Origin: Botryllus schlosseri
Lineage: Eukaryota
Direction of reading: 5' to 3'
Assembly (NCBI GenBank): GCA_051294905.1
Contig: CM119383.1
Coordinates: 6,076,001 to 6,140,000, forward strand
DNA length: 64,000 nucleotides
Shown here: positions 1 to 64,000 of the stretch, one piece after another
Numbering within the stretch: the first letter of the stretch is position 1
Layout of the letters: each line of letters begins with the position of its first letter
Position numbers and translations under genes: made by a program
The notes under the pieces: generated by a model
The model's database searches: none
What the model was told of the DNA's origin: nothing
What the model saw: only the letters and a program-made list of their open reading frames with translations

Positions 1-2527
1 TGTGAAGTTTTCTCATATCAAACTATTGAAAAAAAAACGAATTTCTCTAGTTGGTGTATACTTATTTCGTTCATCATACGCAAACAAAAGGATATAAACG
101 CGAAATCTGCGTCATAACTGCGTCAATCTGTATTCAACTGCAAGTTCAAGTTTGTAATCATCATTTTAATCGGTTACCAACGAAAGTATACTAGTTGTGA
201 TATAAACACGCCGTGACTTATGGAACAGTTTGTGCAATTTACGGATGGCAGCGGTTTGGCCGTGACCCACTCCATATTCTCCGACCTCTGCGGCATTCGT
301 GTCGCCGGTAATTTGAAATCGTGACTCGGCTGAGCACTGCGAGTCAAATATAGCACCGAAAATTCCTATTGTGTACATTTTATTGCGACTTACGGCGTGC
401 TAACCAGGTCATTAGAGGATATTTCCGATTTAGGTCGCATTGTTCCCTGAAAAATTGGCCGTCTTCAAATAAAGTTCGTGAATGGGATTAGTCTTGGGTT
501 TGATTGAGATCAGAAATGAAATTTACCTTGATTTGGAGCGCAATTATTATAAACACGAGCATGAATAACCAGTTTCGTCCGAATGCAACCGCCCGTATCT
601 GCAGTCTACATCTTGTAGCGTTGCTCAATTTACGTTCATGTCTAATGCCTATACTTTGCGATCGCATTCGTTCAAATATTGATCAATTGACGCCGTTATT
701 TATTTGCGAAGAGTGCATATACCAGCCGTAATTTTCGGAAAATCTTATAGTAAGCTTACTAACAGTCGCGCATCCATCCACACCATGGCACGGTTCACAA
801 ATACTGCCCGAAAATTTTGTCACCCGGTGATAAACTGATGCTTTGATTTCGTAACAAGCTTACGGGATTATCGACATTCATCCTGTTGCGTCATTGCAAC
901 TCAAAAAAATCTTTTCGCAAGGTGACTAAATTCGAAGGCATACCGGTACTCAATGAAATAAGCACGTCTTTACTGGCGACAAAAGATACCCGCGTATTAA
1001 CGCGTTTTCAATCCGACTGCTTGTGCGGTAATCATGGCGTGCCACGGTAAATTGCTGCGTTCGAAAGCGCATGGCTGTAAAACTATTCAGCGAAATAAAT
1101 TGGAAACGAAACCAATGTATTCGCGATTTATTCGTAATCCGATGATATATTCGAAATCGATTTGGCTATCACGAGTTTCAATTTCCATGTGTTGCCTGAA
1201 GATGAAGTACTTCGCGCTTTGCCACGGTAATGCGAGAGCATTTGCTAATAATTGAACTGGAATGGTACGCAATTGTGCTTAATTTGAAGATCGTAACTTA
1301 ATCCCATCTTAGATGGTTATGGAAACATATAATGTGCGTGAGAGTGTAATGCAATACTCGGTGGTATGGTGACGCCACGATGCCTCTCTACCGGACCGGA
1401 ACAAACGTCGCTCATCAGAATGGCGCGTGCAACATCGCAACATTGAATAAATTACTGTCATCACTTTTTAATGGCTTCTGATATGAAGTGTATATTACAT
1501 AGACCGTTACTTACGGCAGTCAGCAATGCTTTCAATATGTCGGTAGCACATTTAGTAGTTGAGAAAACCGTATTCATGTTCGATTTAAACCTATTGCTAC
1601 AAGTAATAAAACAACGGGAGTGGCAATTTTTTTCACTGTTTGAGCACACCACAAACGCAATCTTAACGCTTGTCAACTGAATAGGATGTGGCATTGTTTG
1701 GATACTCGTAGATTTGATATAATACGACGATGAAAAATGACCAGAGTATCGTGAGATGTCAAATCACACTGTGAAACATAATAAATGTATCGGGTACCAT
1801 GTATATTGAGTGGGTATTCTCAATAATAATCGGACTTTGCGAGAACGCTGACACATCCAAACCAGACAATCTATCGTACAGCGTCACTTTGGAGTGTTTG
1901 ATCCCTGGTGATTTGCGGATGTGGACATTAGACATGAATTCCAAGGTTTTTATGAACCGCCCGTGTGGATGAGAAGTCATATTATCATAGTAATATCATG
2001 GCATCGCGATTCTCCTGAGTAATTATGCAAACATCGATCGCAGAACTTGGAACAAGCCGTAAAATTACCGATGTCCATTCACGCTACAGGCATTCCCACG
2101 TGACTGAATTATATAGTTATATAACGGCTTAAAGGGATAACATATTCCTAAATTATTTTAGATTACAACAATAGAAATGTCAACGCTTGTGAGTGATGAA
2201 ATTCATACCTTCCGTTGGAAACTGGAAGTTATGTGACATTTGATTAACGTCAAGAATCTTCATCGTAATCATCACCACCTTCATTAATAGCACTCTATAG
2301 TCCCAGGAGGTTTTATTTACTAGTAACAGTGTTGACATCCGACATATGCACGTCATTTGCCAAAGAAACTCAAGGAAAGTCATGCCTATATGTCATTTTG
2401 GACAATCGTTGTAAACAAAACGTCTAACTTCCAAGGCATAACCCCCAGGATATTTGCACTTCATACGATCTTCACCATTGTACGCATCATGCATACATGA
2501 ATCCAAATAATAGTGTTATGTTTTTAG

Positions 2528-5500
2528 ATGGAATGGCGTCCAGATCCTAAGCGACACGACCTTTGCGTTGCTTTCGAGCCAAACCCGGTAGGTATATATA
2601 ACATTTTCGCCCTAATCAGTTAGTCTGACCGCAGCACATCGTTACAGGAACTCTGCACGAATGTCATACATATATTGCACTCCGTCAATGATACTCACCT
2701 TTACGCGTGTGGGACAAACGCCCGGCAACCACGCTGCATATACGTCAACAAGAAGGTGAATTATGACGGCAGTATCTTATCATAGAACGGACTTCTGACC
2801 CGCATATCTACATGGTTTCGAAATACAATGGGGTGGAAAATTTCTGTAACTATTTAAAGGCGGTTTGTCATAGCAGCGAATAAGGTCAGATTAAGCGACC
2901 GGTGCCGCTGATTTTTCAAATCAAACGCATTTTATGAGATTATTGATGTATCATTAACGGTAGTTCACTTGCAACAATACCGGCATTCGTGCTACATATA
3001 TACTTGCGTACTGTTCTACTTAGACGGTGATTTACTGCTGGCGCCAGATATATATTAGAATCATTGGGATGTACACCATACACATCTACCTTTACATTAC
3101 CGGTATAGTATTAACGTGTTTGAAACCCGTCAGTCGTCGTTTAGCAAAAGGAATCGAATAAATAATTTGCGACCACACAATGCCACTATACGTGCGTCAT
3201 ATGGGTATCAGTGTCATATCGCGACAGTGGTTGACTCTGTCGGGTTCGTATCTCCTCAAGGCCAGCCAGTTTGCTCCGTCCAAGTTTACTTAGAGCTTAG
3301 ACGATAGTGCATGACTAACGGTCTGCGTGGATCAAGTATTCGCCGGCAATGAAATCAGAGAAACGTTCCTTATTCGATGCTTTATTCGTCTGGTTAATTT
3401 CCTCGACGTGCCCAACCGGCTTTTACGCGCGCGGAGTTACTCACAATACGCCCCAAATGTGTCATAAGTCGGATATTTGTCTTTGATGTATTGTTCATAG
3501 TTGCACCTTAATCTGGCAAATACAATGTATCATTCTGGAATCGTGTGGATGAATTTAGAATTTTTCTTGTGCTACGATCACGATCCTTACGCGAAGGCGA
3601 CATCGTATCGCTGTCAACCATTCAGCGTTATACATTCTATTTTGACAGACTTTCACGCAAGAAGGATCAGATATAAGGGGTGAATCAAAATCTCCCGGAG
3701 ACCCTTTTTCGAAAACTGTATCGACAATGACAGGTATGTCCACACTGGCGCTGGCACGCAATACCTTCAACTGTATTCTTTCCAATGTTCTACTATCTGG
3801 TGAGGTGACGATTACCCCTGACGAATGTCAGACAAAAATATTCTTATCTTGGCCGGATGAAAATAATCATACCTTATGCAACCGCTATCATTTCTATTAT
3901 GTAATGTTTCCCAGCTTTGCATGCTCAAAACTTGTTCAATAATTCGTGTTACATTTCCCAAGTATGTGTCACTCGACGAAATGCATTCAAATCTCAAAGT
4001 CAGGTAGAATGTTACCCGACACGCAATGTATCGAATGACACATAATAAGCATTTTTGTCGCATTGTCCGAATTTCAATATCCGCCACCGCACTCGAGTTG
4101 TATCATCTTTGTACTTAGTCTTTCTACGGCCCAGTTTTTTACAGGGAATAACAGTTTCAAGTACCTGATCATGATCATATAGTGAGATAGGCAATATATC
4201 TATCGCGTTTATTTGAATTCTTCTTGAATTACACTTCTCTTGCCCTGTGTATGAGCCGTGTTCGATAAGAGTTACAGTTCTATTGTTAACGTGTGACAGA
4301 TCTATCTTTTCGGAATATTTGGCTAATACCGTGTTGTCGGATATAAATTGATCTAGCTATCAGATTTTAAATTTGGATTAGTCTGCCACATCTTTACTCT
4401 CGCCGCTGTGAAGACACCCAGGGGCATTAAAAACGCACCGAAATTTTGTTTTTTCGTCACAACGAGGTGATTGTAATTCAACTATTTTCATGTCTCATTC
4501 ATGGTTAGCTGTTTTGTGCCGCCTTTACCAAATTGTAACCGACAATAACCTCGGAATCTTCAAGTCATCGTTTTTTTTTATGGACACTGCACAGATGCTA
4601 GATAAGATTGCTATTATTGTGCTTGTACTTGTTGTAGTTACTAAGAGATGCATTCCATCCGCAATTACCCAGTCTTAGTCGGGAATTTGCGCTTTGATGG
4701 AGTTTTATTTAGGCTTGGCCTAACGCGCTACGCTATTCACAGCACGTGACATCAAACGAACGTAAACTTTTCTTAACCGTTGCACGCGCCTGCATTGAGT
4801 CAAGTAGATTACCTACTGATGAGCTGACTTATCTGCATGAATCCTAACGCCCTTTCGCAAAGTTCAATCCACTTTAGGCGTATTATTGCACCACTTCCGA
4901 TGACATGTTGTGTCTTGTATAGCATCCTACGGCAGTCACGGTATGATTACACTGAGTAAGGAAGCATCTCCTGTGACAGACTCCTTGACTGCTTTGTTTC
5001 TGCATATCCGTGTACTCTTGCTTCAAATATTTATGCAGTATTTACTGAGACTGGTTTTAACTTGAAAGCATTGGTCGATTTCTCATTCTGTATCCAGGGC
5101 GTGCGCATAGTGTGTAGTCATTTTACGCGTGACTGACTGGCCACGTTTTGTGATGACATAATCGGGCCGGTAGTGCGGGGCATGGACCGGAGCCGGATCG
5201 GATATCCGGCCGGATTTTTTCAATTTTGGTCGGGCCGGATCGGAGCCGGATCAGTATTTTTTCTGCTACGGCCGGAGCCGGATCGGAGCCGGATCAGTAT
5301 ATTCTTGATCCGGCCACAGCATGACTATAGTAACTTCCGACCACAGTGAGAAAATAACCGAGCCATATCTGTAAAATCACTGAGCCATGACCAAAATTTA
5401 TGCTAACTCATTCAATCGCAGCATTTATTATATGACTAAGCATTTATTACCTCCATCATCCTTGTTTCCACTGTATGTGGTCGATGCGGTCTCCTTAGCG

Positions 5501-8500: not shown

Positions 8501-11500
8501 TTTTCTGGCGCATTATCATGTTTGCGAGATGCGAGCGCAGATACGCGAAATTTCAATTGCAATTAATTGTTATCGGCGCGCGGTCAAGCTCATAAATATT
8601 GTTATGACTAAAACTGCTTGCATCCGTTTTATTTCATGACGGGGCTGTTTGAATTTTGCTAACTCCGTTGTTTTTAGGTGGATCTTTGTTCACTGCTAAC
8701 AATCCCAATTCTCGAAACAAGAACGGAATCATCCGGAAATCGCCCGCCGACCGTGCCGACGGCGCGCTGGCCACCGACGAATTTGACAACTTTCGTCTGA
8801 GCGGTACGTAAGCTCTACTGCGTTCCGTGCTCATGCACTCTTGTAGTTAAAACGATATTACAGTTGATTAGCAATAAAAGGTCGGTGATCAAAAGTTTTA
8901 CCGCTCTTTTTCCGCCGGTGTGACGTAGTACATTATCGAAACGTTTATACTTCTTTAATTATGTGTAAGAGCGGGACGTTGAAGCTAAGTTAGGAAACCC
9001 ATTACGCATAGGATTGGTTTCTGGTAAACCAAAATTGACTTGTCGATTACTTATTGAAAGTTACGCAATTTCGGATGCGATCGATGACTGTTAAGGAGAG
9101 GACTATTTTTTACCGATTATGTATCATGGTAACATATAATATAGGTATCTTATTTTCGAATCATTAAATATGATTTATGTATTACTATTATATAATTCTG
9201 TGGATCTAGTACCGAGCCTATGATGCTAATTCACAGTCATCATAGCACTCAATCGACACGAAACCAAGAATTGCTCCCAAAGCACCGTGAATGACTTAGT
9301 ATATAGCCTGGCGTAGTGTATCAGCTGTTCACCTTATTCAATTTGTTGAAATCCATCCATCAAATATAGGCTCGTTTCGTATTTGCGAATGTCGTCCGAT
9401 CTCTAAAATATTTAACTCCTACCACATCATACATTTGGTGCTGGAGCAGGACCGTTGGGGCAAATACTTTCATATATTATGATTCTGAAAGGATCGGTTT
9501 ATTGCAGGTTTAATTGAGCAACACTTCTTCCATACGGATACGAGTAGAAAGTTGGCTAAATCAATGTTCGAAAATTGCTAATTTTAGAATTTTCGGTAAT
9601 ATTTGAAGAGCTTCTTGGAGGTACAGAACTTCAATATAAAATTAAATAGTATATTCATATTGAAATGAACCCGAATATTTTCGGCTGACACTCATCAGGG
9701 GTATATCAACGATACAATGTTCTTTCCAATTCTCTACTAGTTGCTGACGATTACCCCTGACGAGTGTCAGCCTAAAATATTCGGGTTCATTTCAATATGA
9801 ATATACTATTTAATTTTCGGTAATTACAATTCCGTTTCACCCATCAGCCTTACCGATTATATTTTATTGGTTGCAACTAGCACACGAAACAGAGACATTG
9901 CATTGGCTGCGGATATCCCGCAATTCCTTTTTTTATAGTATGTTGTGTTCCAGGAATATTTGGCGAAATCTCTTTTGTGTTTAGGTATGCCAAATTTATT
10001 CACGTTTGTAGTTGTTGTGAAAAACACGGCGCAGATTGAAAGCAAACGGTTGTTTCGAAAGCACACAAACATATAAAAACACGAGAAGGCCGATTATCAA
10101 ATAAGCTATTACATTCCAGCGCGGAGCTTATTCAGTCGGTTAAAGAGAAGGTATTTCTCCTTCAAGATCGATGTGTAGTGCGTTAACCTTGCCTCACGAT
10201 TTGCCAAACATCTCTCGCTATCAATATGGAAATAGCGACTTTTCTGATGGAAGTGATGCGCACATATACTGTGGGCACACTTTTGTAACATATACGTTGA
10301 TATAAACTAATACTCCTAAACAGGAAATCATATACCGGTATACCAGAACCAATCTGCTTCATTTTTACAGATATACTATCACACGATTCGTGGAATGTTG
10401 AAGCCTGATATAACCTCTGTGTTCCTAACTTTTAGATAACATTTCAGGGCAAAATACTTTTATTTCCTTATTAGCATTCCTCAGTAAAAAGTCATCCCTC
10501 GTTAGGCATCGCGACCCGAATTTATCATATTTTGACGACGAACAAAACTCGCTTTCAATACCCGCCATTCATAGATGTGTGTCATGTATTTAGACGCCAG
10601 ATTCGTGAGCATGTTTACGGTTCCTGGACTGGATTCCGATCAGGAAAAGATCGTCGTGCTGTTCAAGGAAAACGCCGAGGAAATTCCTCTGGAAATTCTC
10701 ACTCAAGATAGCGACTACTCAGTCAACCTGGTGTACTCAAGAATGGCCACTTTATGCGCGGTATGTCCCTACATATAGAACTTGTAGGCGTCGTTTCTAT
10801 AGTTATATCGTCCCGATTTAATCTTTCGGGCTATATTCCGGAAGAGTAGTAGACCTGTAAAATTGGTATGAGAAGCTGTTTAATCGGATTACGCCGAAGT
10901 GATATATTTACATCACAAGGACTGATCTCTAGAGCGCATCAATCTCTGATCTGCAGTACACTCACGCCTCGTATATACTTACGTCTACAGAACGACCGCG
11001 GCGGCTTGACATGGCTTTCTCAAAACAGGCAACTAGCCACCTTCTCCAAAATGCGGATCGCATGTCCGGTTTCGATTCAGCATCCCGGCAAGTCTCGGGC
11101 AATGTCGTTTTTTTACGACGAGATCGGTGAGATTTTACGCCTGTTACCGGGAACAACTGCGATTGCAATGCGTGCTGTGCTTTTTAGAGAGCAGCTATGT
11201 GATTCCCAACCCAGAGCAGCCTGATAACCCGACCGTGTACGCAATTTTCGGCACTCCAAAGTAAGATTCTTTCGCTGGATGCACGGAGTTGATTTCAATG
11301 TATTGGACAACTCAGCTGTTTCGAATTAGATTAGAATGTATAGCTACTCATTTTCTATACTCGTTGCGCACTAGTTAATTATCAAAGTCGATTTGCCAGC
11401 AAGCAACGGACGCGATGACACATTTATGCATTGTTCCATCACAGGGGAGCGTATCACGCGACAGCTACTTGCGTTTACTCCATGCGAGACATCAGACAGC

Positions 11501-22899: not shown

Positions 22900-24718
22900 A
22901 TGCTTGGCCGAACATCCACCGTACTCCTGCGACGAGGTTTCCTCACGTCAGCCCGTCAAGCTGGTGGACACGGTCCGCCAACGGCAAAGGATATTCTTCC
23001 ATTCAATCCATTTCAGAACAGGTCAGAAATTACATCACAATCCGTTATTTTCTATTTGAAATCATTGAGTAGTCTCGATTTCAAGATGAAATACTCGTCT
23101 ACGACCTGCTCCTACGCTACCGCAGTAGGCCTATTATTATACGGCATGTCACAAACATTGAACATTACCCAAGCCATATTGTCTATGTGAAGTATAGATT
23201 CAATTCAAATTCAATTTAATTATTGCTAGTAATTTCATCATTTCAACACACCATGAGACTGCGATATAATGAAAGATAGGAAGGTGTGTAAACGACTTGG
23301 AGTAGTCTTCGAAATCAAACACCCACCTGGCCTAGGCGATATATAAATGGAGGCATGCACACTGAATGAAAAGTGAAAGAAAATTATATGATAGGACCTG
23401 TGATAAAAAAGGTGGCATGTGCCAGAAGGCGAGATCGATGTGTCAGGTCGTGGTCCGGTAAAGTACAGCGCTTACTAGTATTGATTCAGTAGAAATTGTT
23501 TGTATTTTAACTTTAACTACAGACATGCTCGACGACTGACATAAGTCCTTTACAGAGTGCACTCTACTTCTCAAATGAACATCTTTCAGATGATATGCTA
23601 TGACGATGTGATAAGCTTTTTAGTTTGCCCAAGCCCATTCCAGTCTCTGGCTCTAGAGTTAACCGTAAGGTTGTCCGCAGTGCACTTCTTTGACTTCTTG
23701 ACACGCTGCCTTCACACAACGTGGGCAAACTGGCTTGCTACATATGTTAATCTTGTCACTAGTCTTTACTTTATATTGTTTTGTGGTTAGGATGTGAGTG
23801 AATTGACTAGTTTGTGTCTGAAAATTGCCGCTAATTCCCTCCAAACGTTACATATAGTTGATCTGTGTCGACAGGTTTCACAGAGGACTTACAGAACTCC
23901 AATATACAATTGAATAGTACATTCATATTGAAATGAACCCAAATATTTTCGGCTGACACTCATCAGGGGTAATCGTCAGCAACTAGTAGAGAATTCAAAA
24001 TAACATTGTATAGCAACAATCGTATCACAAAATATGACGTCACCAGCATGAAATATCGAATACGAGAGCGTTCAATTTCACACAATAAAATTAGAGATCT
24101 CGCGCCATTTTTGGTGCTGTCATGCTGTGAATTCAAATTTGTAACCTAGGGAAACCTCCATTGACCCAAAATTGCAGAAAAGGCAACAAGAACCAGAAAA
24201 AGGAGGTAGCAATTGTGTGCTTACAAATACGTCACATTGTGCTGGTCACCTCAGATTTCATATGTGTCGGTTTACCAAATTAAATAAATGAATTAGCCTT
24301 CTTTCCTGATATAAATGTTCACTGTTCACGGCTAACGTTTTTGCCGGTGGAATTCAGTTCTAAATGCATACATGCATGAAACAAAATTCCACACTTGGAA
24401 ATTGGGCCAACGTTGAGCAGGTCTGGGTAGTTGCATGGGGTTTCTATGCGTCTCCTCTCTCAACCCGAAAGACTATATTTTTACCCTCTCATTATGCCTT
24501 GCGACTTCATGTAGGCTAGCCTTCAAACTCCCACTCCCCGCCCGACTCCGCAAAATTAAAATGCATTTCTAGATTCTAGCTGCTGGCTTACAAAATCTCA
24601 TATGTTCTTTTCTTTCAGATGGGTCCTTCTGGTTAAGATGGGAATTTTTGCTGGATCCGGGTTTGGCCTTCCGTTCTATGCCGTCTATTTTCAGTTGAAG
24701 AAGAAGTACGGAAAATGA
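22900..24718 (+). CDS. COX7C: Cytochrome c oxidase subunit 7C, mitochondrial (73 aa)
   Basis: Exons 22900-23021 and 24619-24718: MLGRTSTVLLRRGFLTSARQAGGHGPPTAKDILPFNPFQNRWVLLVKMGIFAGSGFGLPFYAVYFQLKKKYGK. Presequence plus the LPF..N.W.LL.KM....G..F..PF.....QL pattern of COX7C; AATAAA near 24909. Confidence 0.9.
23198..23517 (-). mobile_element. 3' fragment of an L2/CR1-group-like LINE
   Basis: Homologous to 27940-28297 and 30400-30670; ends in a short (AATTG/TTGAA)n tail at 23198-23220. Confidence 0.65.
23889..24012 (-). mobile_element. PLE family-B pseudo-LTR fragment with intact hammerhead (23937-23970), antisense in the COX7C intron
   Basis: Sense: GCUGAC-gauu-ACCC-CUGAUGA-GUGUCAGCC-GAAA-AUAUU-U-GGGU, then ATG (23926) MNVLFNCILEFC. 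Confidence 0.8.
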
Positions 24719-46740: not shown

Positions 46741-47654
46741 GGTCTCGTTTTTAAAATGAATACGTAAATAAACAGTCCAAATCCGTACTCAATTAACCTT
46801 GAACGTTAACTATGCTGCTCCGAGATTAACTCCGATGTGCTTATACTGCAACAAGATTTCTGTCTTTGAAAATTCCCTCTGACCTTCACTTTATGTGGCA
46901 ACTGGTATTATCGAGACTACTTTTTAGAACGGTAACTCTATCACATGCCGACGTCCTCCTCACATTCAACACCAACGTGCTAATTGGTCGTTGTTTGGAC
47001 CACTTCCTATCTACCGGCGTTTTGATTGCCACCAACTTTTTCATTGTTCTGTTGACAATGCAGCGCTCCCTTTCTCGCTACGAGAGTCTAAATTTGACAA
47101 TTACAGCTGCGGGAAGCTGACAGATTCATGAGTGATTAATCCGTGACTGTCATCATTCGGCAGGAAGTGCCCGTCATCTCTCGCTGTCTTTCGATTCGAT
47201 GATTGTGTCAGTGGGCTGGTATGACTTCATCTTACACGTGGCTGGTATCGGACTGGTCTCGTCTCTGCTTATCTCATGTAGCGTGCTCGGTGTCCTGTGC
47301 ATTGATTTCGGTGATTAGCTTCAAGGAAGCACGATTAGAATGTGTTTCCTGTAGAAGTATGTACAAGTAAACGTGCGGCATTGTTTGTCTTCCGATATAC
47401 TGTTTTCCTGCTAGTGCTATTTCTGTGACACGCTCCCTTGTTTACCGCGCTGCTCAATACTAAAAACAACGATCTAGGAGATTTTCTCACGGAGTATTGG
47501 ACAAAACGAATTGTCATCCACTGTCGAGCAGAGAGAGAAAATTCTTTTATTCGTCAACCATGAAATATAGTGTAGGCAATGTCCACAAACATTCATGTCC
47601 AATAGTATACATTTTTTAAATAACGCGAAACAATAACTTCATATTGTTAATTTA

Positions 47655-47694
47655 TTCGCTAAAAGCTTTTCGACTAACTCTCATCAGTAGCGAA
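47655..47694 (-). ncRNA. Minimal type I hammerhead ribozyme (family A)
   Basis: Reverse complement of the 58221-58260 motif. Confidence 0.85.
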
Positions 47695-47867
47695 CGTTAG
47701 TGATGGGGTGAATCAAATTCGAAATGTAAGAACTATTTTGTCTGTATGACGTAATAATAACAAAAACAAACAACTAGTAGACGGGCTAGATACGGTAGTA
47801 ACGGTACAAAACAAACGTTAACGAGTACATATTCGGTTATAAATAACCGAAAACACAACACATAACA

Positions 47868-50420
47868 TTAATGAAATATTCCAAGAGTGTAGAGGCGTTC
47901 CTTCTGGCGACAGAGAATCGGCTTTCGTAGCTTTATGATCGTAGATTCCAGGACCTTTAAATGAAACAGAGAACGGCCACGAGCAAGTATAGAAAATTGA
48001 CTGTCATTGTAATGATCAGCACATTCTGGATGGGATAAGAGATGCTGTCCAATAGCCGAATTACAAGCAGTAACTTGATCATAATCACGCAGTGTGTCAA
48101 CAGACTGCGATGAAGGAGTTGGAGAAACAATATTTATTCTAATTTGCCGTGGGACATGCTGGCGAATTCTTTGCTGCAAGCGCTGAGACGTGCGACCTAC
48201 ATACCGACTGTCACATCGGCACGTGTATTCATATATTATGTTGCTTTGATTTGTCGCAGGTAGCACATCCTTTTGCGTTGCAGGCATCAGAGATTTCGTC
48301 ATGAAGATTATCTGAGGTTCTACTTGTGAAAAACAATGGCTCACTGACGATTTAATTTGTTTTTCAAACCTGTTGGACACTTTCCCAATCCAAGGAAGAT
48401 GCAAATAAACAGGACATTTTCTAGGTCCAAACGGTTTAACTTTTCTGAAATCTTTGAGTTTACGATCTATGGTCATTTTAATGATATGATCAGGATAACC
48501 ATTTGACTGAAAGATTGACCGAATGTTCTCCAATTCAGAATCAAGTTTGACTTTACTACAAATCATCAGAGCCCTGTGTACCAGAGTTCTTATCAAATTT
48601 ACTTTACGTTTTACTGGACAGAAAGAATCCCACGAAATGTATTGCCCACTGAATGTAGGCTTACGGTAAACTGATGTAACAAAATTAGCACCCGTCTTTT
48701 CCACTACAACATCAAGGAATGCTAATGAATTATTGACCTCTTTTTCCATGGTGAATTTCAGTGATGGGTGAAGACCATTCAATTTGCTCAGAAACAAATC
48801 ACACTGGGATTCATTTTCAAATATGGCGAAGGTGTCATCAACATATCTTTGATACATTAATGGTCGATCAATATCTTCGAATAACCGTTTTTCGTAATAC
48901 CCCACAAAAATGTTAGCCAGAATGGGACCAAGCGGCGATCCCATTGCAACACCATCGATCTGTGTATATATGGTGTTATTGAAACTAAATTCGACATCAC
49001 AAGTGATCAATCGCATTAATTTAACAAAAGAAGACCTTGAGAATGGAGGAGATGGAAGGACACCACCATAGAGTTCATTGGCACAAATCTCTATAGTCTC
49101 TTGAACTGGCACGTTCGTGAATAAACTAGATATATCAAACGAACACATAGAGATTTCGGACTCATCGAGATCAACATTACGAATGGTATCAGCAAATGTG
49201 AACGAGTCACGAATGCAGTTACCACCATAGAACAAACTCACCGGCTCAAGATATCTCGCAATCCACTTCGCGACTTTGTGATACGCTGATCCAACCATCG
49301 ATAGTATCGGACGTAAGGGTACATTCGATTTATGGGTCTTCGGAAGACCATACATACGTGGTCGAATGGAGCCAGTGGGTCTGATGTCGTCGTATTCAGC
49401 AGAAGAGATTTTTCCCGCCTTCTTGAGGGTCAATAGTAGACGCTGAATACGAGCTTCTATCTTGGAGGTGTTGTCATTGTCACACGCAGGGCCAAGGATT
49501 TCGAATTTAGACTTGTCGCCAAGAATTAAATCCATTTTAGAAATGTAGTCACACTTATTCAAAATGACTACACCAGATCCTTTATCAGGTTTGGTTATGT
49601 GAATTGACTTATTGGATTTCAGGGATCTGATGCTCCTGTAGCAATCGGAAGTCATCGTGAAATCACTTCTGTCGATTGGAGTTCCACAAAAACCATGCGC
49701 TAAGCTACTTAGTTTGGCTTTAAGGGCCACAATTTTCTCACTGTGTTCCTTTGCTCTGCTTTCATCATCAAATTTCTGGTGATGATGTGACAATTGTCCA
49801 AGTAATACCTCAAATTCAGCAAAGACTTCCTCACGCTTGATTTCTGTCGGTGGCACAGAAAAATCCAGACCAAGAGATAGTACCAACTCTTCTGTGTCAC
49901 TCAGCTCATAGTCCGATAAGTTGGTAATAACCTTACTACCAGCAACTGCCTTGGTACCGTATCGTGTCTTGAGAAGCAAGCTGATGTTACGCTCATTCTG
50001 CCGTACCTTCTCATCCTCTTTACGTGCATCAATTTTGGCCATATAACGACAAAACCGTATCAGGTCAAAATAAGATAGAAACTGCACTGCCTGCTGCTTA
50101 AGCTTGGCACAACGTTGAGTTACGGTACTCATCTCTTTTACGCTGTTCTCGATCTCATCATGTAAAAATGCACTCTCAATCCTGGAGTTGATGCGAGCAC
50201 GCGATTTCTCTATCCTCGTCTTCAGAAACTTTGGTACAACTCTTTTCTTTATACAAGCCTTAAGAAAGGCTACATGATACCGTAGATTTCGAATTTTCCC
50301 CCGAGTTCTGACCAACTTATTCAGGATCTCCAATTGTTGGTCACTGTACCGTTTGCGAAAGTATTTAAACAAGTGATTTGTGGTACAGAACTTCAGAATA
50401 ACGCGAAACAATAACTTCAT
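47868..50420 (-). CDS. PLE reverse transcriptase + GIY-YIG endonuclease, full length 850 aa
   Basis: RT motifs YGLPKTHK, SFDISSLFTNVP, QIDGVAMGSPLGPILANIFV, YVDD, AFLDV; GIY-YIG NIIYEYTCRCDSRYVGRTSQRLQQRIRQH..HL..E. Confidence 0.97.
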   Translation of the reverse strand: MKLLFRVILKFCTTNHLFKYFRKRYSDQQLEILNKLVRTRGKIRNLRYHVAFLKACIKKRVVPKFLKTRIEKSRARINSRIESAFLHDEIENSVKEMSTVTQRCAKLKQQAVQFLSYFDLIRFCRYMAKIDARKEDEKVRQNERNISLLLKTRYGTKAVAGSKVITNLSDYELSDTEELVLSLGLDFSVPPTEIKREEVFAEFEVLLGQLSHHHQKFDDESRAKEHSEKIVALKAKLSSLAHGFCGTPIDRSDFTMTSDCYRSIRSLKSNKSIHITKPDKGSGVVILNKCDYISKMDLILGDKSKFEILGPACDNDNTSKIEARIQRLLLTLKKAGKISSAEYDDIRPTGSIRPRMYGLPKTHKSNVPLRPILSMVGSAYHKVAKWIARYLEPVSLFYGGNCIRDSFTFADTIRNVDLDESEISMCSFDISSLFTNVPVQETIEICANELYGGVLPSPPFSRSSFVKLMRLITCDVEFSFNNTIYTQIDGVAMGSPLGPILANIFVGYYEKRLFEDIDRPLMYQRYVDDTFAIFENESQCDLFLSKLNGLHPSLKFTMEKEVNNSLAFLDVVVEKTGANFVTSVYRKPTFSGQYISWDSFCPVKRKVNLIRTLVHRALMICSKVKLDSELENIRSIFQSNGYPDHIIKMTIDRKLKDFRKVKPFGPRKCPVYLHLPWIGKVSNRFEKQIKSSVSHCFSQVEPQIIFMTKSLMPATQKDVLPATNQSNIIYEYTCRCDSRYVGRTSQRLQQRIRQHVPRQIRINIVSPTPSSQSVDTLRDYDQVTACNSAIGQHLLSHPECADHYNDSQFSILARGRSLFHLKVLESTIIKLRKPILCRQKERLYTLGIFH

Positions 50421-50432
50421 ATTGTTAATTTA

Positions 50433-50472
50433 TTCGCTAAAAGCTTTTCGACTAACTCTCATCAGTAGCGAA
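50433..50472 (-). ncRNA. Minimal type I hammerhead ribozyme (family A)
   Basis: Same motif, one unit (2778 bp) away. Confidence 0.85.
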
Positions 50473-50645
50473 CGTTAGTGATGGGGTGAATCAAATTCGA
50501 AATGTAAGAACTATTTTGTCTGTATGACGTAATAATAACAAAAACAAACAACTAGTAGACGGGCTAGATACGGTAGTAACGGTACAAAACAAACGTTAAC
50601 GAGTACATATTCGGTTATAAATAACCGAAAACACAACACATAACA

Positions 50646-53198
50646 TTAATGAAATATTCCAAGAGTGTAGAGGCGTTCCTTCTGGCGACAGAGAATCGGC
50701 TTTCGTAGCTTTATGATCGTAGATTCCAGGACCTTTAAATGAAACAGAGAACGGCCACGAGCAAGTATAGAAAATTGACTGTCATTGTAATGATCAGCAC
50801 ATTCTGGATGGGATAAGAGATGCTGTCCAATAGCCGAATTACAAGCAGTAACTTGATCATAATCACGCAGTGTGTCAACAGACTGCGATGAAGGAGTTGG
50901 AGAAACAATATTTATTCTAATTTGCCGTGGGACATGCTGGCGAATTCTTTGCTGCAAGCGCTGAGACGTGCGACCTACATACCGACTGTCACATCGGCAC
51001 GTGTATTCATATATTATGTTGCTTTGATTTGTCGCAGGTAGCACATCCTTTTGCGTTGCAGGCATCAGAGATTTCGTCATGAAGATTATCTGAGGTTCTA
51101 CTTGTGAAAAACAATGGCTCACTGACGATTTAATTTGTTTTTCAAACCTGTTGGACACTTTCCCAATCCAAGGAAGATGCAAATAAACAGGACATTTTCT
51201 AGGTCCAAACGGTTTAACTTTTCTGAAATCTTTGAGTTTACGATCTATGGTCATTTTAATGATATGATCAGGATAACCATTTGACTGAAAGATTGACCGA
51301 ATGTTCTCCAATTCAGAATCAAGTTTGACTTTACTACAAATCATCAGAGCCCTGTGTACCAGAGTTCTTATCAAATTTACTTTACGTTTTACTGGACAGA
51401 AAGAATCCCACGAAATGTATTGCCCACTGAATGTAGGCTTACGGTAAACTGATGTAACAAAATTAGCACCCGTCTTTTCCACTACAACATCAAGGAATGC
51501 TAATGAATTATTGACCTCTTTTTCCATGGTGAATTTCAGTGATGGGTGAAGACCATTCAATTTGCTCAGAAACAAATCACACTGGGATTCATTTTCAAAT
51601 ATGGCGAAGGTGTCATCAACATATCTTTGATACATTAATGGTCGATCAATATCTTCGAATAACCGTTTTTCGTAATACCCCACAAAAATGTTAGCCAGAA
51701 TGGGACCAAGCGGCGATCCCATTGCAACACCATCGATCTGTGTATATATGGTGTTATTGAAACTAAATTCGACATCACAAGTGATCAATCGCATTAATTT
51801 AACAAAAGAAGACCTTGAGAATGGAGGAGATGGAAGGACACCACCATAGAGTTCATTGGCACAAATCTCTATAGTCTCTTGAACTGGCACGTTCGTGAAT
51901 AAACTAGATATATCAAACGAACACATAGAGATTTCGGACTCATCGAGATCAACATTACGAATGGTATCAGCAAATGTGAACGAGTCACGAATGCAGTTAC
52001 CACCATAGAACAAACTCACCGGCTCAAGATATCTCGCAATCCACTTCGCGACTTTGTGATACGCTGATCCAACCATCGATAGTATCGGACGTAAGGGTAC
52101 ATTCGATTTATGGGTCTTCGGAAGACCATACATACGTGGTCGAATGGAGCCAGTGGGTCTGATGTCGTCGTATTCAGCAGAAGAGATTTTTCCCGCCTTC
52201 TTGAGGGTCAATAGTAGACGCTGAATACGAGCTTCTATCTTGGAGGTGTTGTCATTGTCACACGCAGGGCCAAGGATTTCGAATTTAGACTTGTCGCCAA
52301 GAATTAAATCCATTTTAGAAATGTAGTCACACTTATTCAAAATGACTACACCAGATCCTTTATCAGGTTTGGTTATGTGAATTGACTTATTGGATTTCAG
52401 GGATCTGATGCTCCTGTAGCAATCGGAAGTCATCGTGAAATCACTTCTGTCGATTGGAGTTCCACAAAAACCATGCGCTAAGCTACTTAGTTTGGCTTTA
52501 AGGGCCACAATTTTCTCACTGTGTTCCTTTGCTCTGCTTTCATCATCAAATTTCTGGTGATGATGTGACAATTGTCCAAGTAATACCTCAAATTCAGCAA
52601 AGACTTCCTCACGCTTGATTTCTGTCGGTGGCACAGAAAAATCCAGACCAAGAGATAGTACCAACTCTTCTGTGTCACTCAGCTCATAGTCCGATAAGTT
52701 GGTAATAACCTTACTACCAGCAACTGCCTTGGTACCGTATCGTGTCTTGAGAAGCAAGCTGATGTTACGCTCATTCTGCCGTACCTTCTCATCCTCTTTA
52801 CGTGCATCAATTTTGGCCATATAACGACAAAACCGTATCAGGTCAAAATAAGATAGAAACTGCACTGCCTGCTGCTTAAGCTTGGCACAACGTTGAGTTA
52901 CGGTACTCATCTCTTTTACGCTGTTCTCGATCTCATCATGTAAAAATGCACTCTCAATCCTGGAGTTGATGCGAGCACGCGATTTCTCTATCCTCGTCTT
53001 CAGAAACTTTGGTACAACTCTTTTCTTTATACAAGCCTTAAGAAAGGCTACATGATACCGTAGATTTCGAATTTTCCCCCGAGTTCTGACCAACTTATTC
53101 AGGATCTCCAATTGTTGGTCACTGTACCGTTTGCGAAAGTATTTAAACAAGTGATTTGTGGTACAGAACTTCAGAATAACGCGAAACAATAACTTCAT
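50646..53198 (-). CDS. PLE RT + GIY-YIG, full length 850 aa
   Basis: Same translation as 47868-50420. Confidence 0.97.
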   Translation of the reverse strand: MKLLFRVILKFCTTNHLFKYFRKRYSDQQLEILNKLVRTRGKIRNLRYHVAFLKACIKKRVVPKFLKTRIEKSRARINSRIESAFLHDEIENSVKEMSTVTQRCAKLKQQAVQFLSYFDLIRFCRYMAKIDARKEDEKVRQNERNISLLLKTRYGTKAVAGSKVITNLSDYELSDTEELVLSLGLDFSVPPTEIKREEVFAEFEVLLGQLSHHHQKFDDESRAKEHSEKIVALKAKLSSLAHGFCGTPIDRSDFTMTSDCYRSIRSLKSNKSIHITKPDKGSGVVILNKCDYISKMDLILGDKSKFEILGPACDNDNTSKIEARIQRLLLTLKKAGKISSAEYDDIRPTGSIRPRMYGLPKTHKSNVPLRPILSMVGSAYHKVAKWIARYLEPVSLFYGGNCIRDSFTFADTIRNVDLDESEISMCSFDISSLFTNVPVQETIEICANELYGGVLPSPPFSRSSFVKLMRLITCDVEFSFNNTIYTQIDGVAMGSPLGPILANIFVGYYEKRLFEDIDRPLMYQRYVDDTFAIFENESQCDLFLSKLNGLHPSLKFTMEKEVNNSLAFLDVVVEKTGANFVTSVYRKPTFSGQYISWDSFCPVKRKVNLIRTLVHRALMICSKVKLDSELENIRSIFQSNGYPDHIIKMTIDRKLKDFRKVKPFGPRKCPVYLHLPWIGKVSNRFEKQIKSSVSHCFSQVEPQIIFMTKSLMPATQKDVLPATNQSNIIYEYTCRCDSRYVGRTSQRLQQRIRQHVPRQIRINIVSPTPSSQSVDTLRDYDQVTACNSAIGQHLLSHPECADHYNDSQFSILARGRSLFHLKVLESTIIKLRKPILCRQKERLYTLGIFH

Positions 53199-53210
53199 AT
53201 TGTTAATTTA

Positions 53211-53250
53211 TTCGCTAAAAGCTTTTCGACTAACTCTCATCAGTAGCGAA
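53211..53250 (-). ncRNA. Minimal type I hammerhead ribozyme (family A)
   Basis: Same motif, two units away. Confidence 0.85.
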
Positions 53251-53423
53251 CGTTAGTGATGGGGTGAATCAAATTCGAAATGTAAGAACTATTTTGTCTG
53301 TATGACGTAATAATAACAAAAACAAACAACTAGTAGACGGGCTAGATACGGTAGTAACGGTACAAAACAAACGTTAACGAGTACATATTCGGTTATAAAT
53401 AACCGAAAACACAACACATAACA

Positions 53424-55688
53424 TTAATGAAATATTCCAAGAGTGTAGAGGCGTTCCTTCTGGCGACAGAGAATCGGCTTTCGTAGCTTTATGATCGTAG
53501 ATTCCAGGACCTTTAAATGAAACAGAGAACGGCCACGAGCAAGTATAGAAAATTGACTGTCATTGTAATGATCAGCACATTCTGGATGGGATAAGAGATG
53601 CTGTCCAATAGCCGAATTACAAGCAGTAACTTGATCATAATCACGCAGTGTGTCAACAGACTGCGATGAAGGAGTTGGAGAAACAATATTTATTCTAATT
53701 TGCCGTGGGACATGCTGGCGAATTCTTTGCTGCAAGCGCTGAGACGTGCGACCTACATACCGACTGTCACATCGGCACGTGTATTCATATATTATGTTGC
53801 TTTGATTTGTCGCAGGTAGCACATCCTTTTGCGTTGCAGGCATCAGAGATTTCGTCATGAAGATTATCTGAGGTTCTACTTGTGAAAAACAATGGCTCAC
53901 TGACGATTTAATTTGTTTTTCAAACCTGTTGGACACTTTCCCAATCCAAGGAAGATGCAAATAAACAGGACATTTTCTAGGTCCAAACGGTTTAACTTTT
54001 CTGAAATCTTTGAGTTTACGATCTATGGTCATTTTAATGATATGATCAGGATAACCATTTGACTGAAAGATTGACCGAATGTTCTCCAATTCAGAATCAA
54101 GTTTGACTTTACTACAAATCATCAGAGCCCTGTGTACCAGAGTTCTTATCAAATTTACTTTACGTTTTACTGGACAGAAAGAATCCCACGAAATGTATTG
54201 CCCACTGAATGTAGGCTTACGGTAAACTGATGTAACAAAATTAGCACCCGTCTTTTCCACTACAACATCAAGGAATGCTAATGAATTATTGACCTCTTTT
54301 TCCATGGTGAATTTCAGTGATGGGTGAAGACCATTCAATTTGCTCAGAAACAAATCACACTGGGATTCATTTTCAAATATGGCGAAGGTGTCATCAACAT
54401 ATCTTTGATACATTAATGGTCGATCAATATCTTCGAATAACCGTTTTTCGTAATACCCCACAAAAATGTTAGCCAGAATGGGACCAAGCGGCGATCCCAT
54501 TGCAACACCATCGATCTGTGTATATATGGTGTTATTGAAACTAAATTCGACATCACAAGTGATCAATCGCATTAATTTAACAAAAGAAGACCTTGAGAAT
54601 GGAGGAGATGGAAGGACACCACCATAGAGTTCATTGGCACAAATCTCTATAGTCTCTTGAACTGGCACGTTCGTGAATAAACTAGATATATCAAACGAAC
54701 ACATAGAGATTTCGGACTCATCGAGATCAACATTACGAATGGTATCAGCAAATGTGAACGAGTCACGAATGCAGTTACCACCATAGAACAAACTCACCGG
54801 CTCAAGATATCTCGCAATCCACTTCGCGACTTTGTGATACGCTGATCCAACCATCGATAGTATCGGACGTAAGGGTACATTCGATTTATGGGTCTTCGGA
54901 AGACCATACATACGTGGTCGAATGGAGCCAGTGGGTCTGATGTCGTCGTATTCAGCAGAAGAGATTTTTCCCGCCTTCTTGAGGGTCAATAGTAGACGCT
55001 GAATACGAGCTTCTATCTTGGAGGTGTTGTCATTGTCACACGCAGGGCCAAGGATTTCGAATTTAGACTTGTCGCCAAGAATTAAATCCATTTTAGAAAT
55101 GTAGTCACACTTATTCAAAATGACTACACCAGATCCTTTATCAGGTTTGGTTATGTGAATTGACTTATTGGATTTCAGGGATCTGATGCTCCTGTAGCAA
55201 TCGGAAGTCATCGTGAAATCACTTCTGTCGATTGGAGTTCCACAAAAACCATGCGCTAAGCTACTTAGTTTGGCTTTAAGGGCCACAATTTTCTCACTGT
55301 GTTCCTTTGCTCTGCTTTCATCATCAAATTTCTGGTGATGATGTGACAATTGTCCAAGTAATACCTCAAATTCAGCAAAGACTTCCTCACGCTTGATTTC
55401 TGTCGGTGGCACAGAAAAATCCAGACCAAGAGATAGTACCAACTCTTCTGTGTCACTCAGCTCATAGTCCGATAAGTTGGTAATAACCTTACTACCAGCA
55501 ACTGCCTTGGTACCGTATCGTGTCTTGAGAAGCAAGCTGATGTTACGCTCATTCTGCCGTACCTTCTCATCCTCTTTACGTGCATCAATTTTGGCCATAT
55601 AACGACAAAACCGTATCAGGTCAAAATAAGATAGAAACTGCACTGCCTGCTGCTTAAGCTTGGCACAACGTTGAGTTACGGTACTCAT
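53424..55688 (-). CDS. PLE RT + GIY-YIG, 5'-truncated copy (754 aa from internal Met97)
   Basis: Homology ends at 55726 (palindrome centre); catalytic motifs intact. Confidence 0.85.
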   Translation of the reverse strand: MSTVTQRCAKLKQQAVQFLSYFDLIRFCRYMAKIDARKEDEKVRQNERNISLLLKTRYGTKAVAGSKVITNLSDYELSDTEELVLSLGLDFSVPPTEIKREEVFAEFEVLLGQLSHHHQKFDDESRAKEHSEKIVALKAKLSSLAHGFCGTPIDRSDFTMTSDCYRSIRSLKSNKSIHITKPDKGSGVVILNKCDYISKMDLILGDKSKFEILGPACDNDNTSKIEARIQRLLLTLKKAGKISSAEYDDIRPTGSIRPRMYGLPKTHKSNVPLRPILSMVGSAYHKVAKWIARYLEPVSLFYGGNCIRDSFTFADTIRNVDLDESEISMCSFDISSLFTNVPVQETIEICANELYGGVLPSPPFSRSSFVKLMRLITCDVEFSFNNTIYTQIDGVAMGSPLGPILANIFVGYYEKRLFEDIDRPLMYQRYVDDTFAIFENESQCDLFLSKLNGLHPSLKFTMEKEVNNSLAFLDVVVEKTGANFVTSVYRKPTFSGQYISWDSFCPVKRKVNLIRTLVHRALMICSKVKLDSELENIRSIFQSNGYPDHIIKMTIDRKLKDFRKVKPFGPRKCPVYLHLPWIGKVSNRFEKQIKSSVSHCFSQVEPQIIFMTKSLMPATQKDVLPATNQSNIIYEYTCRCDSRYVGRTSQRLQQRIRQHVPRQIRINIVSPTPSSQSVDTLRDYDQVTACNSAIGQHLLSHPECADHYNDSQFSILARGRSLFHLKVLESTIIKLRKPILCRQKERLYTLGIFH

Positions 55689-55782
55689 CTCTTTTACGCT
55701 GTTCTCGATCTCATCATGTAAAAATGACTCCAGGATTGAGAGTGCATTTTTACATGATGAGATCGAGAACAGCGTAAAAGAG

Positions 55783-58047: not shown

Positions 58048-58220
58048 TGTTATGTGTTGTGTTTTCGGTTATTTATAACCGAATATGTACTCGTTAACGT
58101 TTGTTTTGTACCGTTACTACCGTATCTAGCCCGTCTACTAGTTGTTTGTTTTTGTTATTATTACGTCATACAGACAAAATAGTTCTTACATTTCGAATTT
58201 GATTCACCCCATCACTAACG

Positions 58221-58260
58221 TTCGCTACTGATGAGAGTTAGTCGAAAAGCTTTTAGCGAA
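58221..58260 (+). ncRNA. Minimal type I hammerhead ribozyme (family A)
   Basis: UUCGCUA-CUGAUGA-GA(GUUAG)UC-GAAA-AGCUU-U-UAGCGAA: 7-bp stem I, 2-bp stem II, palindromic stem III AAGCUU, predicted cleavage after 58253; ATG at 58273. Confidence 0.88.
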
Positions 58261-58272
58261 TAAATTAACAAT

Positions 58273-60825: not shown

Positions 60826-60998
60826 TGTTATGTGTTGTGTTTTCGGTTATTTATAACCGAATATGTACTCGTTAACGTTTGTTTTGTACCGTTACTACCG
60901 TATCTAGCCCGTCTACTAGTTGTTTGTTTTTGTTATTATTACGTCATACAGACAAAATAGTTCTTACATTTCGAATTTGATTCACCCCATCACTAACG

Positions 60999-61038
60999 TT
61001 CGCTACTGATGAGAGTTAGTCGAAAAGCTTTTAGCGAA
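60999..61038 (+). ncRNA. Minimal type I hammerhead ribozyme (family A)
   Basis: Identical motif; ATG at 61051. Confidence 0.85.
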
Positions 61039-61050
61039 TAAATTAACAAT

Positions 61051-63603: not shown

Positions 63604-63776
63604 TGTTATGTGTTGTGTTTTCGGTTATTTATAACCGAATATGTACTCGTTAACGTTTGTTTTGTACCGTTACTACCGTATCTAGCCCGTCTACTAGTTG
63701 TTTGTTTTTGTTATTATTACGTCATACAGACAAAATAGTTCTTACATTTCGAATTTGATTCACCCCATCACTAACG

Positions 63777-63816
63777 TTCGCTACTGATGAGAGTTAGTCG
63801 AAAAGCTTTTAGCGAA
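63777..63816 (+). ncRNA. Minimal type I hammerhead ribozyme (family A)
   Basis: Identical motif in the terminal partial unit; ATG at 63829, and the element stops at 63878. Confidence 0.85.
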
Positions 63817-64000
63817 TAAATTAACAATATGAAGTTATTGTTTCGCGTTATTCTGAAGTTCTGTACCACAAATCACTTATTTTTTAAATATTATCCCAAC
63901 TATATTTTACACGGTTTATACTGGGAGACCCGATATGACCGGAGTCTTCTAGGCCGGAGTCACCCAAGCATATTGGCAGTATTAATGATAATATGAATCA

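What the first reader, a model, noticed from the sequence alone, without database searches (positions are those of the whole stretch)
9588..9824. A 237-bp miniature of the giant palindrome from a sister PLE family
Seen: head-to-head arms, each holding a hammerhead plus the first codons of a PLE ORF (MNILFNFILKFCTSKKLFK vs MKLLFRVILKFCTTNHLFK), flanked by a 13-bp direct repeat AATTTTCGGTAAT whose right copy overlaps the element end by 6 nt. Inference: two independent events, 38 kb apart and from diverged families, share one geometry (two outward 3' ends, 12-13-bp staggered cut, junction microhomology). This points to a reproducible insertion mode and argues that the large array is not merely an assembly artefact. 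It could easily be misannotated as a MITE.
Basis: partly seen in the sequence, partly recalled or inferred. Interest (0 to 1): 0.8.

Follow-up and report, generated by a model that had tools for sequence, protein, structure and literature searches.

The report
Tiny head-to-head Penelope retroelement insertion
This 217-bp palindrome is the scar of one insertion of a Penelope-like retrotransposon in which both cut DNA ends were used to copy the element's RNA tail, a pattern already documented for these elements, so it is a clean but ordinary example.

Summary
Window 9601-9817 carries two inverted copies of a Penelope-like element (PLE) tail (66-nt arms, 64/66 complementary), flanked by an exact 13-bp direct repeat whose right copy shares 6 nt with the element end. 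Each arm contains the PLE minimal hammerhead core and the start of the conserved PLE ORF.

I read it as one insertion made by target-primed reverse transcription from both 3' ends of a 13-nt staggered cut. Both cDNAs were severely 5'-truncated and joined through an 8-nt filler. Each arm holds element sequence the other lacks: a 37-nt 3' tail on the left and 40 nt of extra 5' sequence on the right. A simple fold-back therefore cannot have made it.

Four other head-to-head insertions share the geometry: the 16-kb array in this window and three loci from two other assemblies. Each has one short and one long terminus inside the ORF start and a 12-13-bp duplication.

The literature already describes this: inverted 5'-truncated PLE copies with a 30-40-bp tail at one end (PMC8557442), and in vitro extension of both strands from two RT start sites (PMC11167929). 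The scan's first readers also noted at least five similar mini-palindromes elsewhere in this genome.

No full-length family-B element was recovered. This is a new member of a known kind, of low to moderate interest.

The parts
9588..9600 (.). Target-site duplication, left copy (AATTTTCGGTAAT). Read on the - strand in frame after LFK it gives YYRK.
   Evidence: Exact 13/13 direct repeat; in-frame reading.
9601..9637 (-). The 37-nt 'tail': ORF codons 8-19 of family B (ILKFCTSKKLFK). Present only in the left arm, which ends at the long terminus (+56..+59 from the ATG).
   Evidence: Lies outside the inverted repeat. Translation. Homologous to the family-A tail and to copy 23885-24011. Matches the 30-40-bp one-sided tail in PMC8557442.
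9638..9703 (-). Left arm, palindromic part. Helix I strand ACCC; hammerhead core (C3 at 9698, predicted cleavage after 9673); ATG at 9658-9656; codons 1-7. 5'-truncated at TACCCC, so the upstream helix-II box is missing.
9704..9711 (.). 8-nt filler TATCAACG between the 5'-truncated ends of the two arms. It matches neither arm's continuation in copy 23885-24011.
   Evidence: alignment A1.
9712..9751 (+). Extra 5' sequence present only in the right arm. It includes the helix-II partner box GCTGAC (9743-9748).
   Evidence: Contiguous with the right arm in copy 23908-24011, 92% over 104 nt.
9752..9817 (+). Right arm, palindromic part. Hammerhead core CTGACGA at 9757-9763, G12->T at 9773, predicted cleavage after 9782, ATG at 9797-9799, codons 1-7. 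Ends at the short terminus (+15..+21).
9812..9824 (.). Target-site duplication, right copy. Its first 6 nt (AATTTT) are also the last 6 nt of the right arm (microhomology).
23885..24011 (-). Single-arm family-B tail fragment. It serves as the independent reference that carries both the extra 5' sequence and the tail region.
   Evidence: 92-94% identical to the mini arms; begins MNVLFNCILEFC.
3776..3843 (+). Older, degenerate family-B fragment. Its homology stops at the predicted hammerhead cleavage site.
47611..63890 (.). Family-A head-to-head array, used for comparison. Arms 47619-55726 and 55745-63852, each holding about three 2778-bp units. TSD ATTTTTTAAATA at 47611 and 63879. Left arm ends short (+20..24); right arm ends long (+50..54).

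Best explanation
This is the footprint of one retrotransposition event of a Penelope-like element (family B).

Inferred from geometry: the element's endonuclease cut both target strands 13 nt apart, leaving two 3' overhangs. Each overhang annealed by a few bases to element RNA inside the first codons of the ORF and primed reverse transcription. One priming was at a 'long' site (about +57) and the other at a 'short' site (about +20).

Shown by sequence: both cDNAs stopped early, after 103 and 106 nt, and the two arms are joined through 8 untemplated or unassigned bases.

Inferred: repair of the overhangs produced the 13-bp duplication.

The hammerhead motifs are passengers of the RNA tail. At this locus they are incomplete and are not expected to act.
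For: Geometry. The sense strands point outward, with the cDNA of each arm continuous with a 3'-ended copy of the duplication.

Independent synthesis of the arms. The left arm alone has the 37-nt tail and the right arm alone has 40 nt more 5' sequence. Both segments are authenticated by the separate copy at 23885-24011.

PLE identity.
- The N-terminal motif is conserved among 120 listed homologues.
- Family A has RVT_1 and a weak GIY-YIG hit.
- The hammerhead fold is supported by covariation: 82% of cells paired against 24-39% in slid controls, with 7 pairs showing compensatory change.

Recurrence. All five head-to-head insertions have one short and one long terminus, tails of 30-58 nt (four of them 30-37 nt) and duplications of 12-13 bp.

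Fold-back test. The arm that is longer at its 5' end is the short-terminus arm in 3 cases and the long-terminus arm in 2. That is expected for independent priming and not for fold-back.

Literature.
- PLE insertions often carry an adjacent inverted 5'-truncated copy and a 30-40-bp tail at one end only (PMC8557442).
- A purified PLE protein cleaves and extends both strands and starts RT at two adjacent internal sites in the ORF start; the tail is the sequence between them (PMC11167929).
Against: - No full-length family-B element was found in the window, in the fetched loci or in a metagenome pattern scan. The family's autonomy and its true sequence beyond +59 are therefore unknown.
- No empty allele of the site was available, so the duplication is inferred from the repeat alone.
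- Whether one RNA or two were copied, and how the central junction formed, cannot be read from the sequence.
[quoted passage not shown] Here 3-6 nt of overlap occur at most junctions.
- The five examples were gathered opportunistically, not by census.
Confidence: 0.8

Rival explanations
1. Fold-back (snap-back). One cDNA is made from one nick, its 3' end folds back on itself and copies itself, and the hairpin is then resolved into an inverted duplication.
For: The 16-kb array and L006 have one arm that is a subset of the other at both ends, which this model allows. L002 has a 13-nt inverted repeat at its central junction that could be a short snap-back. One palindrome in L005 carries 85 nt of flank inside the perfect inverted repeat, as fold-back into the flank would predict.
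Against: In the mini element the spacer belongs to the right arm, so the right arm would have been made first. Yet the left arm carries a 37-nt element tail that the right arm lacks. Under fold-back it would instead have copied target flank. The same contradiction appears in L002 and the L005 mini palindrome.
Confidence: 0.05
2. Two successive insertions. A 5'-truncated family-B tail inserted first, and a second copy later landed in opposite orientation exactly at its 5' end.
For: PLE endonucleases favour PLE sequence as a target (PMC11167929). The arms differ at 2 of 66 positions.
Against: One duplication brackets the pair, and no second duplication flanks either arm. Five independent loci show the same single bracket. 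Both arm differences lie in the right arm, and one (T/C) sits at a CpG, so that one could be later decay.
Confidence: 0.07
3. A MITE or other DNA transposon with terminal inverted repeats, unrelated to retrotransposition.
For: It is small, non-coding, palindromic and flanked by a direct repeat. The only Rfam hit is hairpin-like (MIR8562, 56 bits against a threshold of 211).
Against: The inverted repeat does not reach the left end, where 37 nt are unpaired. The arms are PLE tail plus ORF start. The other in-window copies are single arms with different end points. The same end geometry bounds insertions from 0.2 to 16 kb.
Confidence: 0.03
4. Assembly artefact: a chimeric join of reads from opposite strands.
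For: Palindromes can arise from library chimeras.
Against: The structure is only 217 bp, has two arm mismatches, asymmetric ends, a filler and a precise 13-bp duplication. A strand-flip artefact would produce none of these.
Confidence: 0.01

Closest known systems
Complex tandem/inverted insertions of Penelope-like elements with a one-sided 30-40-bp 'tail' (Craig et al. 2021, PMC8557442, which cites Evgen'ev & Arkhipova 2005 and Arkhipova 2006)
   Same: 5' truncation; an inverted 5'-truncated copy abutting the other copy; a tail at one end only (37 nt here); a hammerhead in the pseudo-LTR region; a target-site duplication.
   Different: Both copies are truncated to about 100 nt, so no ORF or pseudo-LTR remains. 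In the five cases examined the duplication is confined to 12-13 bp, whereas the literature calls PLE duplications variable.
In vitro behaviour of the Anolis PLE protein PAc (Frangieh et al. 2024, PMC11167929)
   Same: Both strands are cleaved and extended. There are two adjacent RT start sites inside the ORF start, and the tail is the stretch between them. Targets are AT-rich, and the bottom-strand nick here follows ...AAAATT.
   Different: The start sites are at about +20 and +57 here, against +111 to +118 in PAc. Junctions here show 3-6 nt of overlap with the target, whereas PAc initiation was reported as non-homologous. This locus is a genomic footprint, not a biochemical assay.
L1 twin priming (Ostertag & Kazazian 2001; recalled from my own knowledge, not checked here)
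   Same: The second 3' end of a staggered break also primes on element RNA, giving an inverted segment inside one duplication.
   Different: In twin priming the two segments are adjacent, non-overlapping parts of one RNA. Here both arms contain the same 3' sequence, which requires two priming events in the same tail region, on two RNAs or on two units of a concatemeric RNA.
Minimal type I hammerheads of PLEs (Cervera & de la Pena 2014; Lunse et al. 2017; summarised in PMC7761336)
   Same: CUGANGA...GAAA core, a 1-bp helix III and a position in the PLE tail. The 4-nt loop III is palindromic here (AUAU, AGCU, ACGU), by direct reading of the alignment.
   Different: Helix II is not a hairpin. Loop II pairs with a box about 20 nt upstream. 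Earlier follow-ups of this scan already noted this, and it is supported here by covariation.
MITEs
   Same: Small size, inverted repeat, flanking direct repeat.
   Different: The ends are asymmetric, the content is retroelement-derived, and there is no evidence that the unit moves as a whole.

Membership tests
Penelope-like element (EN+ PLE) insertion | PLE-type reverse transcriptase ORF | tested here: inconclusive
   Family A meets it: RVT_1 E = 7e-10, and 525 homologues, of which the 120 listed carry PF00078/PF28514/PF26215 in various combinations. For family B only the first 19 codons are present, and no full ORF was recovered.
Penelope-like element (EN+ PLE) insertion | C-terminal GIY-YIG endonuclease | tested here: inconclusive
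   The family-A C-terminus gives PF01541 at E = 1.1e-3, 19.7 bits, below the 22.6-bit cut-off. Some homologues carry PF01541. Family B could not be tested.
Penelope-like element (EN+ PLE) insertion | Conserved N-terminal ORF motif of the clade | tested here: met
   MNILFNFILKFCTSKKLFK matches (I/L)LKFCTT..LFKYFR.RY, seen in the homologues.
Penelope-like element (EN+ PLE) insertion | Frequent 5' truncation with an adjacent inverted 5'-truncated copy | tested here: met
   Both arms are truncated at 9703 and 9712 and lie head to head. Defined as in PMC8557442.
Penelope-like element (EN+ PLE) insertion | 30-40-bp tail at one end only | tested here: met
   37 nt (9601-9637) on the left arm only. 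The comparison cases have 30, 36, 36 and 58 nt.
Penelope-like element (EN+ PLE) insertion | Target-site duplication | tested here: met
   13-bp exact repeat; 12-13 bp in four other cases.
Penelope-like element (EN+ PLE) insertion | Hammerhead motif in the tail or pseudo-LTR | tested here: met
   Core found by pattern search. Helices I and II are supported by covariation across 9 sequences.
Hammerhead ribozyme (Rfam families) | Score at or above a family's gathering threshold | tested here: not met
   No hit at the gathering threshold in the window. No hit at E <= 10 on 9500-9900. Only RAGATH-1-hammerhead, 20 bits against 56.3, on the family-A tail.
Hammerhead ribozyme (catalytic core) | CUGANGA, GAAA, UH cleavage site and helix I | tested here: inconclusive
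   The left arm has all of these but lacks the upstream helix-II box. The right arm has UAAA in place of GAAA. Activity was not tested.
MITE / TIR DNA transposon | Terminal inverted repeats that reach both ends, with constant termini among copies | tested here: not met
   The left 37 nt are outside the repeat. The other copies are single arms with different ends.
L1-type twin priming | Inverted and direct segments are non-overlapping parts of one RNA | tested here: not met
   The arms share 66 nt of the same sequence.

The most novel reading that the evidence does not exclude
In this PLE clade integration would be an obligately asymmetric two-ended reaction. A dimeric RNP cuts both strands 12-13 nt apart, and the two 3' ends always start at different RNA sites, one long and one short. 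Target choice would be guided partly by similarity of the target to the element's own sequence just 3' of the long start site, either by RNA-DNA pairing in the manner of telomerase alignment or by endonuclease homing to its own tail.

Hints in favour:
- Five of five insertions have one long and one short terminus.
- The mini element's duplication reads YYRK in frame, where the family has YFRKRY. The motif's frequency among window 12-mers is 1.5e-4.
- The pre-insertion site of the 16-kb array aligns to the element's own +31..+68 region; 22/5000 and 48/3000 random sequences score as high.

Against: no such similarity at L002 or L006, the sample is small, and the tests were post hoc.
Probability: 0.2. 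Interest if true: 0.55.

Novelty: new member of a known kind. Interest (0 to 1): 0.3.

Why it matters
Because it is so short, this locus shows every junction of a PLE insertion in 237 bp. It gives in vivo support for the two-strand, two-start-site reaction so far seen only in vitro, and it excludes simple fold-back for this kind of palindrome.

For annotation, such relics should be masked as PLE tails and not called MITEs or miRNA hairpins.

It also shows that the head-to-head architecture of the neighbouring 16-kb array has a small counterpart within read length.

The mechanism itself is already in the literature, so the gain is confirmation and detail, not discovery.

Tried and rejected
- Rfam at the gathering threshold on the whole window, and at E <= 10 on the locus, found no hammerhead. 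There was only a hairpin-driven MIR8562 hit far below threshold, which I rejected as a family assignment.
- tblastn of the family-A protein against the rest of the window found no family-B RT.
- A metagenome scan for the family-B hammerhead pattern gave 0 hits.
- Logan and ENA contigs for the homologues closest to 60% identity (P0010, P0027, P0088) belong to other samples and families, not to family B.
- The scan's own notes gave nothing when searched by sequence or by words for a full-length element.
- I looked for templating of the 8-nt filler. There is only a 4-bp TATC/GATA symmetry, which I judged insignificant.
- I tested whether all targets resemble the element. This was significant only for the 16-kb array.
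- The large palindrome in L005 does not fit the rule. Both its ends are short, 85 nt of flank lie inside the repeat, and no duplication was found. I left it as an exception.

Full report
**What is there**

Window 9638-9703 and 9752-9817 form a 66-nt inverted repeat, 97% complementary, with 48 nt between the arms. The 13-mer AATTTTCGGTAAT occurs exactly at 9588-9600 and 9812-9824. As a single strand the region folds at -109 kcal/mol, z = -16. In the 47.5 kb outside the large array, only four loci have any exact 13-mer pair spaced 100-400 bp, and the other three lie inside longer repeats. A 13-mer pair bracketing the palindrome is therefore not chance.

**What the arms are**

- On the - strand the left arm reads hammerhead core, then ATG (9658-9656), then MNILFNFILKFCTSKKLFK.
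- On the + strand the right arm reads the same core, then ATG (9797), then MNILFNF, and runs into the 13-mer, sharing AATTTT with it.
- The 850-aa ORF of the 2778-bp units at 47.6-63.9 kb carries RVT_1 and a weak GIY-YIG hit.
- That ORF has 525 homologues, and the 120 listed carry PF00078/PF28514/PF26215 in various combinations. Their N-termini share (I/L)LKFCTT..LFKYFR.RY, so the family-B peptide is a genuine PLE ORF start.
- tblastn with family A hits 9658-9590. At the DNA level the tails are about 70% identical.
- Two more family-B fragments lie in the window: 23885-24011 (92-94% identical, single arm) and 3776-3843 (older). No family-B RT was found anywhere I could search.

**The hammerhead**

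Rfam does not recognise it. By direct reading:

- Family B has CUGAUGA - G U GUCAGC C - GAAA - A[AUAU]U - C|, with helix I ACCC/GGGU.
- Family A has CUGAUGA - G A GUUAGU C - GAAA - A[AGCU]U - U|, with a 7-bp helix I.
- Loop II pairs with a box upstream: GCUGAC/GUCAGC in B and ACUAAC/GUUAGU in A.

On nine tails from five families, 82% of cells are paired against 24-39% when partners are slid, and 7 of 14 pairs show compensatory change. This agrees with earlier notes of the scan and with the minimal, dimer-type PLE hammerheads in the literature (PMC7761336).

At this locus neither copy is complete. The left arm lost the upstream box through truncation, and the right arm has G12->U.

**Anatomy and mechanism**

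The sense strands point outward. The cDNA of the left arm (+ strand, 9601->9703) is continuous with the 3' end of the left 13-mer. The cDNA of the right arm (- strand, 9817->9712) is continuous with the 3' end of the complement of the right 13-mer. That is the geometry of a break with two 13-nt 3' overhangs, each used as a primer.

The left arm ends at about +57 of the ORF and the right arm at about +20. The 37 nt between them exist on the left only. The right arm has 40 nt more 5' sequence (9712-9751). The separate copy at 23908-24011 is contiguous across that segment and across the palindromic part of the arm, and it also covers the tail region.

Each arm thus has element sequence the other lacks, so copying one arm from the other (fold-back) cannot produce the structure. 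Two RNA-templated syntheses are needed. They meet at 9703/9712 through an 8-nt filler.

**Recurrence**

| Insertion | Duplication | Short terminus | Long terminus | Tail |
|---|---|---|---|---|
| Mini element (this locus) | 13 bp, AATTTTCGGTAAT | +15..21 | +56..59 | 37 nt |
| 16-kb family-A array | 12 bp, ATTTTTTAAATA | +20..24 | +50..54 | 30 nt |
| L002 (ENA ERZ21736675), about 4.2 kb | 12 bp, AACATCCCAAGT | +22 | +55..58 | 36 nt |
| L006 (ERZ22157276), about 3.7 kb | 13 bp, AAACCTATTTTTG | +19..22 | +54..58 | 36 nt |
| L005 mini palindrome, about 0.37 kb | 12 bp, AAATATGGCTTA | near the ATG | +56..60 | 58 nt |

- All five have one long and one short end.
- The arm that is longer at its 5' end is the short-terminus arm in three cases (mini element, L002, L005 mini) and the long-terminus arm in two (family-A array, L006). 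Independent priming predicts this mix, and fold-back does not.
- One larger palindrome in L005 is an exception. Both its ends are short, and 85 nt of flank lie inside the perfect repeat.
- First-reader notes of this scan list at least five more mini palindromes with 12-13-bp duplications elsewhere in this genome. I could not inspect them.

**Comparison with what is known**

Craig et al. 2021 state that PLE insertions are highly 5'-truncated, often have an inverted 5'-truncated copy at the 5' end, and often carry a 30-40-bp tail at only one end. They describe the duplication as variable in length.

Frangieh et al. 2024 showed that a purified PLE protein cleaves and extends both strands. It initiates reverse transcription at two adjacent internal sites in the ORF start, and the tail is the sequence between them.

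The mini element is what those properties predict when both cDNAs abort early. It is therefore a new, very compact member of a known kind.

Four details may interest specialists:

- The duplications span only 12-13 bp.
- All five insertions have one long and one short terminus.
- Most junctions show 3-6 nt of overlap with the target.
- The sequence excludes fold-back for this locus.

**Loose ends**

- The left 13-mer, read in frame after LFK, gives YYRK, close to the conserved YFRKRY. The frequency of this motif among window 12-mers is 1.5e-4.
- The pre-insertion site of the family-A array aligns with the element's own +31..+68 region; 22/5000 and 48/3000 random sequences score as high. This could mean homing to old PLE tails or homology-guided priming. 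L002 and L006 show no such similarity, so I leave it as a hint.

**Verdict**

Interest is 0.3.

Noticed in passing
window 9588-9600 (- strand) and window 47591-47622 + 63891-63920: The mini element's duplication reads YYRK in frame after LFK, resembling the conserved YFRKRY. The pre-insertion site of the 16-kb array aligns over about 40 nt with the element's own +31..+68 region (about 0.4-1.6% of random sequences score as high). The targets may be old PLE tail relics or sites chosen by homology.
   Followed up: partly
window 3776-3843: In a degenerate family-B fragment, homology to the other copies stops exactly at the predicted hammerhead cleavage site (...ATATTC|).
   Followed up: no
L005:4552-12845 (ENA ERZ22157276 ctg13815l): This tandem PLE palindrome has both arms ending at the short site, and the 100% inverted repeat continues 85 nt into non-PLE flank. 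No flanking direct repeat was found. It looks like an inverted duplication that included flank, unlike the other five cases.
   Followed up: partly
L002:4102-4132: A 13-nt inverted repeat GATGTCATCATTA/TAATGATGACATC sits exactly at the junction of the two arms. It is consistent with an 8-nt snap-back at a cDNA 3' end.
   Followed up: no
window 63766-63822, 9738-9795; L002, L005, L006 tails: Loop II of the PLE hammerhead pairs with a box about 20 nt upstream, with compensatory changes in five families. Loop III is always a palindromic tetranucleotide (AUAU, AGCU, ACGU).
   Followed up: yes
window 26905-27000, 38010-38515: Repeats rich in the palindromic motif GACTCGAGTC (80% identical 96-nt copies). 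Unclassified.
   Followed up: no
window 21443-21521 and 27779-27857: A 79-nt inverted pair (90%). Its translation (…GFDSRPG…) suggests a tRNA-derived SINE.
   Followed up: no
window 40843-42804 (-): A 653-aa open frame with a thrombospondin type 1 domain (PF00090, E = 2.5e-5).
   Followed up: no
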